NCBI RefSeq assembly: GCF_001194135.2
Contig: NC_068994.1
Location: 41,953,774 to 41,985,810, forward strand
Length of the DNA: 32,037 nt
Origin: Octopus bimaculoides
Taxonomy: Eukaryota
Direction of reading: 5' to 3'
A program made the translations under genes and the position numbers. Below, piece after piece: positions 10,051 through 27,870 of the stretch (its first letter is position 1; every line of letters starts with the position of its first letter). The notes beneath the pieces were generated by a model. The model made no database searches. It saw only the letters and a list, made by a program, of their open reading frames with translations, and was not told where the DNA came from.

Positions 10051-10059
10051 TCTTGTGAT

Positions 10060-10092
10060 ATATAGATATGTATATAAGTACATAGCTATCTC

Positions 10093-10180
<88 letters not shown>

Positions 10181-10543
10181 TATATACATATGCATATGTA
10201 TACATATATGTGTGTATATATATATACATATATATACAACCAGACATTCATATATATAAATATATACATATATATATTTGTATATATTTATATGTATGTA
10301 TATATATATATATACATATATATACATATGCATAGATATGTGTATATATGTATATATATACATATATATATACACATATGTACATAGTATATTCGTATAT
10401 GTATATGTACATATATATATATGTATATATATACAAATATATATGTATATGTGTATATATATATACACACACCTACCTACACATGTATAATTACATAAAT
10501 ATATATATACATATACATACACACACATTCATATATATACATA
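10060..10543. repeat. (TA)n with degenerate TACA/TATG derivatives
   Basis: Directly visible. Source of the many YI-repeat ORFs. Confidence 0.97.
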
Positions 10544-11223: not shown

Positions 11224-11558
11224 GTAGTTGTACATGTATGTGTGTATACGTGTGTATATGTGCAAGTATTTGGACTCCATGCATGTGCAGTTCTGTATGT
11301 TTTGTTTCATGTATGTATACTCATACACATAGGTTAATGTACAGACATGTGCATATGTGCATATGTGGTAGTATCAAAAAATCCCCAGACTAGTTCTGCA
11401 GCATGCCAACAGACGGTAGCACATTGTTGTATGCACAGTGAAAGTTAGAAATGACCTTCATGAGGTAGTGTGCTGAGTGACATTGCTGTGTTTACTACAC
11501 AAGTTTTGAAATTTGTGTTTTTGTGATCACGTGTATGCTGTAGTCTGTGATTTTTGTC

Positions 11559-12959
11559 ATGGACAGGAAGTTGGAACAAAGACCCAATGTCAAATTTTGC
11601 ATTCAGCTTGGTAAGTCTGCTAAAGAGACGTTGAGCATGCTTTGGCAGGCTTACAGTGATGAGGCAATGGATCATACACAACGTTTTGGGTGGTAGAGGC
11701 ACTTCAAAAGCAGGATAACACTCCTGGAAGACATTGAGAGATCTGGAAGATATTGAGAGATCTGGAAGACATTGAGAGATCTGGAAGACATTGCAAGATC
11801 TGGAAGACATTGCGAGTTCTGGAGGACATTGCGAGATCTGGAAGACATTGAGAGATCAGGAAGACATTGAGAGATCTGGAAGACATTGCGAAATCTGGAA
11901 GACATTGAGAGATCTGGAAGACATTGAGAGATCTGGAAGACATTGCGAAATCTGGAAGACATTGCGAGATCTGGAAGACATTGAGAGATCTGGAAGACAT
12001 TGCGAGATCTGGAAGACATTGAGAGATTTGGAAGACATTGAAAGATCTGGAAGANNNNNNNNNNNNNNNNNNNNNNNNNNNNNNNNNNNNNNNNNNNNNN
12101 NNNNNNNNNNGATCTGGAAGACATTGAGAGATCTGGAAGACATTGCAAGATCTGGAAGACATTGCGAGTTCTGGAGGACATTGCGAGATCTGGAAGACAT
12201 TGAGAGATCTGGAAGACATTGAGAGATCTGGAAGACATTGAGAGATCTGGAAGACATTGAGAGATCTGGAAGACATTGTGAAATCTGGAAGACATTGAGA
12301 GATCTGGAAGACATTGCAAGATCTGGAAGACATTGAGAGATCTGGAAGACATTGAGAGATCTGGAAGACATTGCAAAATCTGGAAGACATTGCGAGATCT
12401 GGAAGACATTGCGAGATCTGGAAGACATTGTAAGATCTGGAAGACATTGCGAGATCTGGAAGACATTGCGAGATCTGAAAGACATTGCGAGATCTGGAAG
12501 ACCGGCCATGAGCGTCAACCCTAGAAATGTAGTATTGGGCATTGAGAATTCATCCCCCAGGATCAGACTATCAATCAAGAGTTCTACTGCAACGTTTTGA
12601 AGTGTCTGGGTGGGGACATTCAGTGAAAACGACTGAATCTGTAGAGCTCAAAGAACTGGAATCTGTACCAAGCTCATCTCACTTGAGAGTTTCTCACCAA
12701 AAACATAGTATCACTTCCACACCTGCCCTATTCACTAGATTTAACACCTGTGGACTTCCATTTATTCCCTAAGATGAAAATGCAGCTCAAAGGTCACTAT
12801 TTTAACACTGTTGTCAAGACCCAGAGAAAATCACAGAAAGACCCCGACTCGATTACAGAAAACAAGTTCTAGGCTGGATTCCAAAAGTAACAGGAACACT
12901 GGGATGGGTGTATTGCTCCATGAGGTAACTATTTCGAAGGAGATGATGTGAAAACTTAG
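11559..12959 (+). pseudogene. Mariner transposase pseudogene
   Basis: MDRKLEQRPNVKFCIQLGKSAKETLSMLWQAYSDEAMDHTQRFGW*RHFKSRITLLEDIERSGR-[array]-SGRPAMSVNPRNV, then a deletion, then EFIPQDQTINQEFYCNVLK and PHLPYSLDLTPVDFHLFPKMKMQLKG (YSPDL motif) ... YFEGDDVKT*. Confidence 0.92.
11724..12502 (+). repeat. 19-bp minisatellite ATTG(A/C)GAGATCTGGAAGAC, about 40 units
   Basis: 17 units left of the 56-N gap, and 20 full units plus one partial unit to its right. Confidence 0.98.
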
Positions 12960-14320
12960 GCAAATAAGTTAATTTTTATTAAACATAATTAGTCCTGGAA
13001 CCTTTTGATACCACCTCGTAAATGTTAAACTTTTGGAAAGTTTTAGATATTTTGACAGGTATATATGTATGTATGTATATATGTATGTATCTACGTATGT
13101 ATATATTTACATATATTATGTAGTTATTTGGATGCTACTTCTCACAGATCAAGTTTTCAACATAGGAGATTAAAATTCCACAAAAATAAAAGAAAGAACA
13201 AAAAGATTTCTTTTTAAATTTACACTTTTATATGTTTTGTTTCTTTTCTACAATTGATAATTCAAATTTTAGTTTGAATTTTTCAAAAAATTTTCTCTGA
13301 TTCATAAGCTTTAAACATGAGAGATTACTATTCTACAAAAAGCATTTTTCTTTTTTCATAAATTCAATTTTTGAATTTACCTCCTCTTCACAAATCTCTG
13401 CCAAATGTTTCATCTTTTCTGATGATGTCTATGAAAGCAATTATGCTTAGTGATTATATTAAATATATGTATGTATGTGTGTGTACATATGTGTGTGTGT
13501 ATGTCTGTGTATGTATGTGTGTGTGTGTGTGTGCGTGTGCATACGAAAATATGCATTTATGTATGTTTATATATATATATATNNNNNNNNNNNNNNNNNN
13601 NNNNNNNNNNNNNNNNNNNNNNNNNNNNNNNNNNNNNNNNNNNNNNNNNNNNNNNNNNNNNNNNNNNNNNNNNNNNNNNNNNNNNNNNNNNNNNNNNNNN
13701 NNNNNNNNNNNNNNNNNNNNNNNNNNNNNNNNNNNNNNNNNNNNNNNNNNNNNNNNNNNNNNNNNNNNNNNNNNNNNNNNNNNNNNNNNNNNNNNNNNNN
13801 NNNNNNNNNNNNNNNNNNNNNNNNNNNNNNNNNNNNNNNNNNNNNNNNNNNNNNNNNNNNNNNNNNNNNNNNNNNNNNNNNNNNNNNNNNNNNNNNNNNN
13901 NNNNNNNNNNNNNNNNNNNNNNNNNNNNNNNNNNNNNNNNNNNNNNNNNNNNNNNNNNNNNNNNNNNNNNNNNNNNNNNNNNNNNNNNNNNNNNNNNNNN
14001 NNNNNNNNNNNNNNNNNNNNNNNNNNNNNNNNNNNNNNNNNNNNNNNNNNNNNNNNNNNNNNNNNNNNNNNNNNNNNNNNNNNNNNNNNNNNNNNNNNNN
14101 NNNNNNNNNNNNNNNNNNNNNNNNNNNNNNNNNNNNNNNNNNNNNNNNNNNNNNNNNNNNNNNNNNNNNNNNNNNNNNNNNNNNNNNNNNNNNNNNNNNN
14201 NNNNNNNNNNNNNNNNNNNNNNNNNNNNNNNNNNNNNNNNNNNNNNNNNNNNNNNNNNNNNNNNNNNNNNNNNNNNNNNNNNNNNNNNNNNNNNNNNNNN
14301 NNNNNNNNNNNNNNNNNNNN

Positions 14321-14351
<31 letters not shown>

Positions 14352-15148
14352 GGAGAGAGAGATGAATATGAATATGATACAAGAGAGGATGTTGAAGAGA
14401 GATAGTCTCCATCGAAAATACGAAACCAACTCACATGCATAAGTTCTTAAGGTTTGAATATATTTATTTGAATTATACCCTCCCTCCACATTTTTCAATT
14501 AATTTTCTTTTGCTGCATTAAAATTTAATGATTTCTAATTTTATACACAACCTTCAGTCAGAAATATATTTTAACAGAATAATTATCACTTTTATTTTCT
14601 TTGTTAGATGTATGAAATAACATTACATACTTAAATGCTTTTCTTTTTCTTTCCTTTGTTTTATTTTTGTTTGTGCTTTTGTTTTATAATTTCTTACTCA
14701 TAACCAAAGTGTCTGAAATTTAAAACTTTTACTTCAGTGGGTGAACACCAGAATCTGAACCGATGACTTTTTCAGCAATTGACAAGTACATAGTTTATAT
14801 ATTCAAATTTTTGGAAGTGATTAATGGATTTGTTAAACTCTTCGGATAATATTGATTTTTAACATCAATATAATCCATTCATTCTGGTGCTGTACTCCAG
14901 TGAAGAAATAAACATTCCAGTCTTTTTGTTAACAGTTAAATGCCACTAATTTGGTTTTTCACTGAAACAAGGATGAAAGAAATATCTAATTATGAATCAA
15001 AACCATATATGAAAATCCATTTCTTGAATGGTATTAAATAATTTGCTTATTACTTTTTAATTGCAAGTTAAATTTTCTTTATAAAATATAATACCATTAA
15101 GGATTAAGAAAAATCATTGTCTAGATTAAGAAAAATCATTGTCTAGAT

Positions 15149-27579: not shown

Positions 27580-27643
27580 GTGTATGTGTGTGAAAGTGTA
27601 TCTATCTTTCTGTCTATCTATCTCTCTGTCTGTCTGTCTGTCG

Positions 27644-27675
<32 letters not shown>

Positions 27676-27760
27676 GCCTGTCTGTCTGTCTATCTATTTG
27701 TCTTATCTCTATTTCTCTACCTTTCTTTCTATCAATCAATCTATCTGTCTGTCTGTTTAT

Positions 27761-27828
<68 letters not shown>

Positions 27829-27870
27829 CTATTTGTCTATCTATCTGTTTGTCTGTCTATTTATCTACAC
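27580..27870. repeat. Compound (TCTA)n/(TCTG)n/(TC)n microsatellite
   Basis: Directly visible. Confidence 0.96.

What the first reader, a model, noticed from the sequence alone, without database searches (positions are those of the whole stretch)
11724..12502. Minisatellite born inside a mariner transposase at the LED-x-ERSGRP motif
Seen: the transposase reads ...ITLLEDIERSGR, then about 40 copies of a 19-mer, then resumes exactly at SGRPAMSVNPRNV. The codons for LED (CTGGAAGAC) and SGRP (tCTGGAAGAC) form a 9-bp direct repeat 19 bp apart, so the unit is the native coding sequence between them. Known: E.D.ERSGRP is a conserved linker after the first HTH of mariner transposases. Inference: microhomology slippage seeded the array, making this a dated record of VNTR birth with a known ancestral one-copy state. 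If other copies carry it, the family is a dispersed satellite factory.
Basis: partly seen in the sequence, partly recalled or inferred. Interest (0 to 1): 0.72.

Follow-up and report, generated by a model that had tools for sequence, protein, structure and literature searches.

The report
Minisatellite grown inside a dead mariner
A 19-base stretch of a decayed mariner transposon's own coding sequence, bracketed by a 9-base repeat that related single-copy elements also carry, has been copied head-to-tail at least 20 and perhaps 40 times; this is a clean example of a known way that tandem repeats arise, not a new kind of element.

Summary
The array is real. It has period 19, 37 complete readable units (17 left of the gap, 20 right) and consensus CTGGAAGACATTGAGAGAT, at 11724-12502 inside a TA-flanked mariner relic (11364-13018). 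Both flanks align base for base with single-copy relatives. Collapsed to one unit, the frame reads ...ITLLEDIERSGRPAMSVNPRNV.

An Octopus bimaculoides copy (L002) carries CTGGAAGAC twice, 19 bp apart, in single-copy state, and matches the unit at 18 of 19 bases. Two further relatives carry 8 bp of the repeat; more distant ones do not. So the repeat predates the array and comes from lineage-specific codon choice for L-E-D and S-G-R-P.

Caveats:
- The 56-N gap is out of register (46 or 65 would fit).
- The right contig starts with a 99-bp exact copy of 11759-11857, so the true count lies between about 22 and 40 or more.
- The host copy is a pseudogene: an in-frame stop, a deletion of about 387 bp, and frameshifts.
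- Nothing dates the event.
- No second array turned up in a protein-index search, an exhaustive HMMER scan or two metagenome DNA scans.

The pattern fits the published noncontiguous-repeat models (Taylor and Breden; Haber and Louis). It is a new member of a known kind, of modest interest.

The parts
11362..11363 (+). TA target-site dinucleotide, 5' side
   Evidence: TA directly before the terminal inverted repeat. Relatives show TA followed by CGAGGTGGTATCAAAA....
11364..11398 (+). 5' terminal inverted repeat of the mariner relic (TGTGGTAGTATCAAAAAATCCCCAGACTAGTTCTG)
   Evidence: Inverted-repeat pair I1, 37 nt, 73% complementary. It aligns to the ends of L002, L003, L005, L006 and L007.
11559..11723 (+). 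N-terminal transposase remnant (HTH1) up to the array, with an in-frame TAG at 11694-11696
   Evidence: Translation. Pfam HTH_48 matches residues 13-51 at E 3.5e-4, 21.1 bits, below the 24.1 cut-off. It is 65% identical to P0001.
11724..12054 (+). 19-bp minisatellite, left contig: 17 full units plus 8 bases. The first unit is the native LEDIER(S) codons.
12055..12110 (.). Assembly gap (56 N) inside the array, out of register with the 19-bp period
   Evidence: An in-register gap needs 8+19k bases.
12111..12502 (+). 19-bp minisatellite, right contig: 3 bases, 20 full units and the terminal 9-bp partial unit CTGGAAGAC (12494-12502). The first 99 bp are identical to 11759-11857.
12493..12530 (+). 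Native coding sequence resuming at SGRPAMSVNPRNV, up to the internal-deletion junction (12530/12531)
   Evidence: Translation. Alignment A3 to L001-L007. The BLAST break maps to L001 484 and 872.
12531..12959 (+). C-terminal transposase remnant (EFIPQ...YFEGDDVKT*), with frameshifts and stops. HTH2 and the first two catalytic Asp regions are missing.
   Evidence: Three-frame translation. Alignment A1 to the L001 conceptual protein.
12984..13018 (-). 3' terminal inverted repeat (reverse complement CGAGGTGGTATCAAAAGGTTCCAGGACTAATT...)
13019..13020 (+). TA target-site dinucleotide, 3' side

Best explanation
A non-autonomous, decayed mariner copy (11364-13018) acquired a minisatellite in place.

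**Starting state (shown).** In this mariner lineage the codons for Leu-Glu-Asp (CTG GAA GAC) and for Ser-Gly-Arg-Pro (tCT GGA AGA Ccg) spell the same 9 bases, CTGGAAGAC, in two reading frames, 19 bp apart.

**First duplication (inferred).** A nascent strand ending in the second copy re-annealed on the first copy, either during replication or during repair synthesis. This duplicated the 19-bp unit CTGGAAGAC+ATTGAGAGAT.

**Expansion (inferred).** Once two or more units existed, in-register misalignment or unequal sister-chromatid exchange expanded the array to at least 20 units, possibly 40 or more, sometimes in multi-unit steps.

**Later change (shown).** An A-to-C change at unit position 14 (GAG to GCG) spread through about half the units and created a CpG. 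That CpG has since decayed to CA or TG in several units.

The array has no predicted function. It is a neutral tandem repeat in a dead transposon in repeat-rich non-coding DNA. It would break the reading frame, which is already broken elsewhere.
For: - Array anatomy and the terminal 9-bp partial unit.
- The collapsed frame reads through LLEDIERSGRPAMS.
- Single-copy relatives carry the noncontiguous repeat at exactly this site and offset: L002 has 9 bp and matches the unit at 18 of 19 bases; L001 and L003/L004 have 8 bp.
- More distant relatives have 6, 5 or about 2 matching bases. The repeat is therefore a lineage-specific codon choice and not a by-product of the array.
- Both flanks are colinear with relatives, with no bases lost or gained.
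- The motif is single-copy in 92 of 121 related transposases and never tandem.
- The ancestral unit type (GAG) matches the relatives' GAG/AAG codon and sits at the 5' edge.
- Variation is concentrated at the new CpG (positions 14 and 15), in a window with CpG observed/expected of 0.33.
- The pattern is the one predicted by the Taylor and Breden (2000) and Haber and Louis (1998) models, as summarised in PMC3389668: short flanking direct repeats and an incomplete terminal unit.
Against: - Copy number and continuity are not established. The gap is out of register and a 99-bp block is repeated exactly at a contig start.
- The two halves of the element are joined only by scaffolding, and a TA duplication cannot prove that they belong to one insertion.
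- The relatives are only 71-78% identical at the DNA level. They are paralogues or copies from other species, not the progenitor of this copy.
- Sequence alone cannot separate slippage from microhomology-mediated repair or unequal exchange.
- The unit has no hairpin potential that might favour slippage (z about +0.8).
Confidence: 0.8

Rival explanations
1. Assembly inflation. The array is real, but the scaffold strings two alternative assemblies of it (haplotypes or graph paths) in series across the gap. The true array would then be about 18-22 units, not about 40. This rival concerns size only and is compatible with the best explanation.
For: - The right contig starts at its first base with a 99-bp exact copy of 11759-11857, including two rare unit variants, and then diverges.
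- The 56-N gap is out of register.
- The window is a draft scaffold with 14 N gaps in 32 kb.
Against: - After the shared block the two unit orders differ substantially. A genuine 5-unit higher-order duplication fits equally well.
- The scaffolder placed the contigs in series with a positive gap estimate.
Confidence: 0.4
2. Pure artefact. The genome has only one or two units, and the assembler generated the array.
For: Short-read assemblies handle tandem repeats poorly, and a gap lies inside the array.
Against: - Two separate contigs each carry 17-20 units.
- There are 13 distinct unit variants in non-periodic order.
- Assemblers collapse tandem repeats more readily than they invent variant-rich ones.
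Confidence: 0.04
3. The array arose before the last transposition, in a mobilisable non-autonomous subfamily. Several copies in the host genome would then carry it: the reader's 'dispersed satellite factory'.
For: - The host copy is an internally deleted element with recognisable terminal repeats, the kind that can be mobilised in trans.
- Tc1/mariner MITEs carrying internal arrays are known in Xenopus (miDNA4; PMC12628747).
Against: - There is no other copy of the element or the 19-mer in the 32-kb window.
- The array peptide found nothing in the 5.8-billion-protein index.
- The exhaustive HMMER scan found only unrelated 19-residue-periodic ORFs, at most 63% identical.
- Two metagenome DNA scans found nothing related.
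- All 9 related loci are single-copy at the site.
- These are weak negatives, because the host genome itself was not searchable.
Confidence: 0.1
4. The mariner inserted into, or captured, a pre-existing 19-bp satellite.
For: Mariners are known to sit inside satellite DNA, for example Mboumar in Messor ants (PMC2581405 and PMC9659126).
Against: - The array lies inside the element, not around it.
- Its unit is the element's own coding sequence (18 of 19 bases to L002).
- Both junctions are seamless with single-copy relatives.
Confidence: 0.02

Closest known systems
Minisatellite birth at noncontiguous short direct repeats (Taylor and Breden 2000, Genetics 155:1313; Haber and Louis 1998, Genomics 48:132), as summarised in PMC3389668
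   Same: - The unit equals one short direct repeat plus the intervening sequence.
- The array ends in an incomplete unit equal to the repeat (9 of 19 bp).
- The flanking repeat length falls in the 5-10 bp range.
- A one-copy proto-state is observable in relatives.
   Different: - Here the proto-state is seen in paralogous or heterospecific transposon copies, not in alleles or orthologues.
- The microhomology comes from two protein motifs (LED and SGRP) encoded by the same bases in different frames.
Transposon-derived minisatellites and satellites in general (Ahmed and Liang 2012, PMC3389668; reviews PMC9659126 and PMC12628747)
   Same: A tandem repeat whose monomer is an internal segment of a transposable element and which expanded locally after initiation.
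   Different: - Most documented cases come from TIRs, LTRs or UTRs. ORF-derived cases (L1 ORF2, CR1 ORF2) are fewer.
- Neither review, searched for 'mariner', turned up a mariner-transposase-ORF-derived array.
- This one is known at a single locus only.
Xenopus Tc1/mariner MITE miDNA4 with internal satellite (Scalvenzi and Pollet 2014, as described in PMC12628747)
   Same: A non-autonomous Tc1/mariner element with an internal tandem array bounded by short direct repeats that are proposed to drive gain and loss of units.
   Different: - miDNA4 is a high-copy MITE family in which many copies carry one to many monomers, and the repeat is proposed to have been captured.
- Here the unit is native transposase coding sequence, and no second array-bearing copy was found.
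Mboumar mariner in Messor ant satellite DNA (PMC2581405)
   Same: A physical association of a mariner with tandem repeats.
   Different: The relationship is the opposite way round. That mariner sits inside a pre-existing satellite, whereas here the repeat grew from inside the mariner.

Membership tests
mariner (Tc1/mariner superfamily) transposon | Terminal inverted repeats of about 30 bp flanked by a TA target-site duplication | tested here: met
   - TA at 11362-63 and 13019-20.
- 37-nt arms, 73% complementary.
- The ends align to the ends of relatives, TA followed by CGAGGTGGTATCAAAA....
- TA is too short to prove a single insertion.
mariner (Tc1/mariner superfamily) transposon | Transposase with an N-terminal paired HTH DNA-binding domain (Pfam HTH_48) | tested here: inconclusive
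   - The window remnant matches HTH_48 at residues 13-51 with 21.1 bits, below the 24.1 gathering score.
- HTH2 is deleted.
- The remnant is 50-65% identical to relatives that pass HTH_48, Transposase_1 and DDE_3.
mariner (Tc1/mariner superfamily) transposon | Intact DD34D catalytic domain (autonomous element) | tested here: not met
   - About 387 bp, covering HTH2 and the first catalytic Asp region, are deleted at 12530/12531.
- The HDNA motif is lost.
- There are several stops and frameshifts.
- It is a dead, non-autonomous relic of the family, not a functional member.
Minisatellite / VNTR | Head-to-tail array of a unit of about 10-100 bp | tested here: met
   Period 19, 37 complete units, score 887.
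Minisatellite / VNTR | Copy number varies among individuals | not testable with these tools
   No population or long-read data were available. The 99-bp block repeated across the gap could reflect two alleles, but this is not shown.
Noncontiguous-repeat (microhomology) origin of a minisatellite | The ancestral single-copy sequence carries the short direct repeat on both sides of the future unit | tested here: met
   L002 has 9 bp, and L001 and L003/L004 have 8 bp, at offset 19. More distant relatives have 6, 5 or about 2.
Noncontiguous-repeat (microhomology) origin of a minisatellite | The array ends in an incomplete unit equal to the direct repeat, and the flanks are otherwise colinear with the single-copy state | tested here: met
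   The terminal CTGGAAGAC at 12494-12502 is followed by CGGCC... Alignments A2 and A3 show colinear flanks.
Dispersed satellite DNA family seeded by a transposon | The same monomer array is present at multiple genomic loci or in multiple element copies | tested here: inconclusive
   No other array was found in the window, the protein index, the exhaustive HMMER library or the metagenome contigs. The host genome itself could not be searched.

The most novel reading that the evidence does not exclude
The overlap of two conserved protein motifs, LED and SGRP, encoded by the same 8-9 bases in different frames 19 bp apart, could make this site a built-in, recurrent hotspot. Many copies of this cephalopod-type mariner lineage would then have given rise to 19-bp arrays independently. 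Alternatively, one array-bearing deleted copy was mobilised and seeded the 19-mer around the genome. Either way, a satellite family's birth could be traced to a specific protein-coding constraint.
Probability: 0.07. Interest if true: 0.55.

Novelty: new member of a known kind. Interest (0 to 1): 0.3.

Why it matters
[quoted passage not shown] Clear cases in which both the one-copy proto-state and the expanded array can be seen are useful teaching and calibration examples.

In this case the proto-state is fixed by a conserved protein motif, so the direction of change from single copy to array is unambiguous. The locus could also serve as a length-polymorphic marker.

It does not change the understanding of mariners or of minisatellites. 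No function is implied.

Tried and rejected
1. **Hairpin-driven slippage.** Three units on either strand, and the one-copy site, fold no better than shuffles (z about +0.8). Rejected.
2. **Other copies in the window.** The terminal-repeat and 19-mer searches hit only this locus.
3. **Protein-index search with the array's open minus-strand peptide.** There were 2381 word-sharing candidates and none was significant.
4. **Exhaustive HMMER with window:12114-12578(-).** This gave 124 hits, all of them other 19-residue-periodic ORFs from unrelated arrays. The best identity was 63% (P0128/P0133). Their inferred unit, ATCAATCAATGTCTTCTCA, shares 14 of 19 bases with the window unit, and their flanks show no evident similarity to the window's mariner antisense ORF. 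I judged this to be coincidence.
5. **Metagenome DNA scans.**
   - An exact two-unit pattern gave 0 hits.
   - A general pattern of three CTGGAAGA at 19-bp spacing gave 2 unrelated hits: L010 (GC-rich) and L011 (GATCTGGAAGATGAAAAAA x3).
6. **Species of the Logan/ENA samples holding relatives.** A search of papers for the accession numbers found nothing.
7. **Rfam and tRNA scans of the window.** Nothing found.
8. **Window ORFs of 90 aa or more.** All are translated microsatellites or run through gaps, with no host gene to name the species.
9. **Shared repeats between the window and relatives' flanks.** None beyond the mariner itself.
10. **Taylor and Breden 2000 (PMC1461170).** Not held in the library. 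It is cited through PMC3389668.

Full report

Yes. Tandem Repeats Finder reports one array at 11724-12502: period 19, nominally 40.5 copies, 85% matches, score 887, consensus CTGGAAGACATTGAGAGAT. A search for that 19-mer with up to 3 mismatches finds 37 complete units. All lie in this interval, and dinucleotide-preserving shuffles give none. Printed in register, there are 17 full units plus 8 bases left of the gap. Right of the gap there are 3 bases, 20 full units and a terminal 9-base partial unit, CTGGAAGAC.

**2. The gap (tested first, as the scan's program asked)**

- The left contig stops at unit position 8 and the right contig starts at unit position 17. An in-register gap must therefore be 8+19k bases (46 or 65). 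The scaffold has 56 N, so the N count is only an estimate. Neither continuity nor frame across it is known.
- The right contig begins at its very first base (12111) with a 99-bp stretch identical to 11759-11857. The stretch includes two rare unit variants (GCGAGTT and CTGGAGGAC). After it the two sides diverge.
- A contig that starts exactly at a long internal repeat is what an assembly graph produces at a branch. Two readings fit. Either a 5-unit block truly occurs twice in one long array, or two haplotypes or paths of a roughly 20-unit array were scaffolded in series.
- The window is a draft with 14 N gaps in 32 kb. The honest copy number is 'at least 20.6 contiguous units, possibly 40 or more'.
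- A pure artefact is unlikely. Two contigs each carry 17-20 units, with 13 distinct variants in non-periodic order.

**3. What the array sits in**

- An inverted-repeat pair (11362-11398 and 12984-13020; 37 nt, 73% complementary) bounds the region. Aligned with relatives, the ends read TA followed by CGAGGTGGTATCAAAA(A/G)GTTCC....
- The element is therefore 11364-13018, with TA on each side.
- With the array collapsed to one unit, one frame reads MDRKLEQRPNVKFCIQLGKSAKETLSMLWQAYSDEAMDHTQRFGW*RHFKSRITLLEDIERSGRPAMSVNPRNV. Pieces of a mariner C-terminus follow in shifting frames (EFIPQ.QTINQEFYCNVL ... PYSLDLTPVDFHLFPKMKMQLKG ... YFEGDDVKT*).
- Pfam gives a sub-threshold HTH_48 match ('HTH domain in Mos1 transposase') at residues 13-51 (21.1 bits, cut-off 24.1). 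A 50%-identical relative, P0002, passes HTH_48, Transposase_1 and DDE_3.
- Against a full-length relative (L001), about 387 bp are missing at window 12530/12531. HTH2, the first catalytic Asp region and the HDNA motif are gone.
- So the host is a dead, internally deleted mariner relic, not a working transposase.
- The last full unit reads IARSGRP (GCG), not IERSGRP.

**4. Is the unit native sequence, and did the microhomology exist beforehand?**

A search with the N-terminal peptide found one relative, P0001 (65% identical). A profile of the window and L001 conceptual proteins found 172 mariner transposases. One of them is annotated in Octopus bimaculoides: P0106, 'GVQW3-like', from GCA_001194135.2. 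I fetched DNA for nine related loci and read the site in each:

| Locus | Sequence at the site | Bases repeated at offset 19 |
|---|---|---|
| L002 (O. bimaculoides) | CTGGAAGACAATGAGAGATCTGGAAGACCT | 9 (single copy; 18 of 19 to the window unit) |
| L001 | CTGGAAGATGACAAGCGACCTGGAAGACCT | 8 |
| L003 / L004 | CTGGAAGATGACAAGCTATCTGGAAGACCT | 8 |
| L005 | CTTGAAGAC...TCTGGAAGAC | 6 |
| L007 | CTGGATGAT...CTGGAAGAC | 5 |
| L006, L008, L009 | - | about 2 |

- The repeat is thus a codon-choice feature of the sub-lineage closest to the window element. The codons involved are Leu=CTG, Glu=GAA, Asp=GAC/T, Ser/Pro=xCT, Gly=GGA, Arg=AGA and Pro=CCN. The repeat is present in the one-copy state and therefore older than the array.
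- Both array flanks align colinearly with these relatives, with no bases lost or added (alignments A2 and A3).
- At the protein level the motif x-[ED]-[DS]-x-x-[RK]-[SP]-G-R-P occurs once, and never in tandem, in 92 of the 121 relatives held. The single copy is therefore unambiguously ancestral.
- The relatives are only 71-78% identical to the window element in DNA. They are cousins, not the progenitor.

**5. Internal history of the array**

- Fifteen of 37 units equal the consensus, which is also the native reading (ATT GAG AGA = I-E-R). The relatives have GAG or AAG at this codon, so the A-type unit is ancestral. It occupies the first three units.
- Position 14 is dimorphic (A 18, C 17, T 2). 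The A-to-C change makes GCG, a new CpG.
- Position 15 shows G-to-A in 6 units and position 14 shows C-to-T in 2. This is the pattern expected from methyl-CpG decay in a window whose CpG observed/expected ratio is 0.33.
- The C-type units dominate the 3' end, including the unit that abuts the flank. Homogenisation therefore reached the array's edge.
- Overall divergence from consensus is 5.3%, or about 2.6% if the A/C dimorphism is counted as one event.
- The two terminal repeats are only 73% complementary, which suggests that the element as a whole is more decayed than the array is heterogeneous. This would fit expansion after insertion or continuing homogenisation. It is a rough inference, not a date.

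**6. Mechanism**

- Shown: the proto-state with a 9-bp noncontiguous direct repeat, a unit equal to one repeat plus the 10-bp spacer, a terminal incomplete unit equal to the repeat, and seamless flanks.
- Inferred: the first duplication came from misalignment of the second repeat on the first, by slipped-strand mispairing or by microhomology-mediated template switching in repair.
- Inferred: growth then followed by in-register slippage or unequal sister-chromatid exchange, with at least one multi-unit step if the 99-bp block is genuine.
- The unit has no hairpin potential (z about +0.8 on both strands), so secondary structure is not needed or supported.
- This is the pattern of the Taylor and Breden (2000) and Haber and Louis (1998) models, as summarised by Ahmed and Liang (PMC3389668).

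**7. Is the array dispersed?**

No evidence was found.

- The window has no second copy of the element or the 19-mer.
- The array's minus strand is open in all three frames, so gene callers would report such arrays as ORFs.
- The consensus peptide found nothing in the 5.8-billion-protein index.
- An exhaustive HMMER scan of 1.84 billion representatives returned only other 19-residue-periodic ORFs, at most 63% identical.
- Two DNA scans of JGI metagenome contigs, which do hold host-derived relatives such as L005 and L006, gave 0 hits and 2 unrelated hits.
- These are weak negatives, because the host genome itself could not be searched.

**8. Comparison with what is known**

- Transposon-derived tandem repeats are common. 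They account for 23% of human minisatellites and satellites (PMC3389668).
- Reviews list mostly TIR-, LTR- or UTR-derived monomers, with a few ORF-derived cases (L1 ORF2, CR1 ORF2). For Tc1/mariner they list the Xenopus MITE miDNA4, whose internal satellite is bounded by microhomologies, and the Messor mariner that lies inside a satellite (PMC9659126 and PMC12628747).
- The present case is a further instance of the same process. It has two tidy features: the monomer is transposase coding sequence, and the microhomology comes from two conserved motifs read in different frames.

**9. Verdict**

- The core interpretation is supported.
- 'Dated', 'about 40 copies' and 'satellite factory' are not established.
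- It is a new member of a known kind, of modest interest (0.3).
- The host is probably a cephalopod. The closest annotated relative is from Octopus bimaculoides, and the window is AT-rich, microsatellite-dense and CpG-depleted. The species was not determined.

Noticed in passing
window 1-32037: The window is an extremely microsatellite-dense draft scaffold. It has 14 N gaps (4783 N, 15%), 34% GC and CpG observed/expected of 0.33. Examples are (AGT)n of about 112 copies at 95-429, (AT)n of about 204 copies at 10058-10465 and (TATC)n of about 67 copies at 27599-27867. No host gene, tRNA or Rfam family was detected.
   Followed up: partly
window 12530/12531: This is the internal-deletion junction of the mariner relic. 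About 387 bp are missing relative to L001 (485-871), which removes HTH2 and the start of the catalytic domain. I saw no obvious microhomology at the junction by eye.
   Followed up: partly
L003 about 1510-1530 (Logan SRR9969974); the same in L004: A related mariner copy carries a short telomere-like insert (GGGGTTAGGGTTAGGG, about 2.5 x TTAGGG). It replaces about 10 bases some 20 bp upstream of the LED codons and is seen as a 9-column insertion in alignment A2.
   Followed up: no
window 15102-15148: A perfect two-copy tandem duplication of a 22-bp unit (GATTAAGAAAAATCATTGTCTA, 2.1 copies, 100% match). It may be another very young proto-minisatellite.
   Followed up: no
P0128 / P0133 (library proteins): These ORFs have a 19-residue period (MSSQSINVFSINQCLLNQS). 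Their inferred 19-bp unit, ATCAATCAATGTCTTCTCA, shares 14 of 19 bases with the reverse complement of the window unit. The flanks show no evident similarity to the window's mariner antisense ORF. I judged it coincidental. Their DNA could not be fetched with the tools allowed.
   Followed up: partly
L011 200-245 (JGI Ga0272442_10272811): An unrelated three-copy 19-bp repeat (GATCTGGAAGATGAAAAAA) contains the same GATCTGGAAGA core. It has no mariner context.
   Followed up: no
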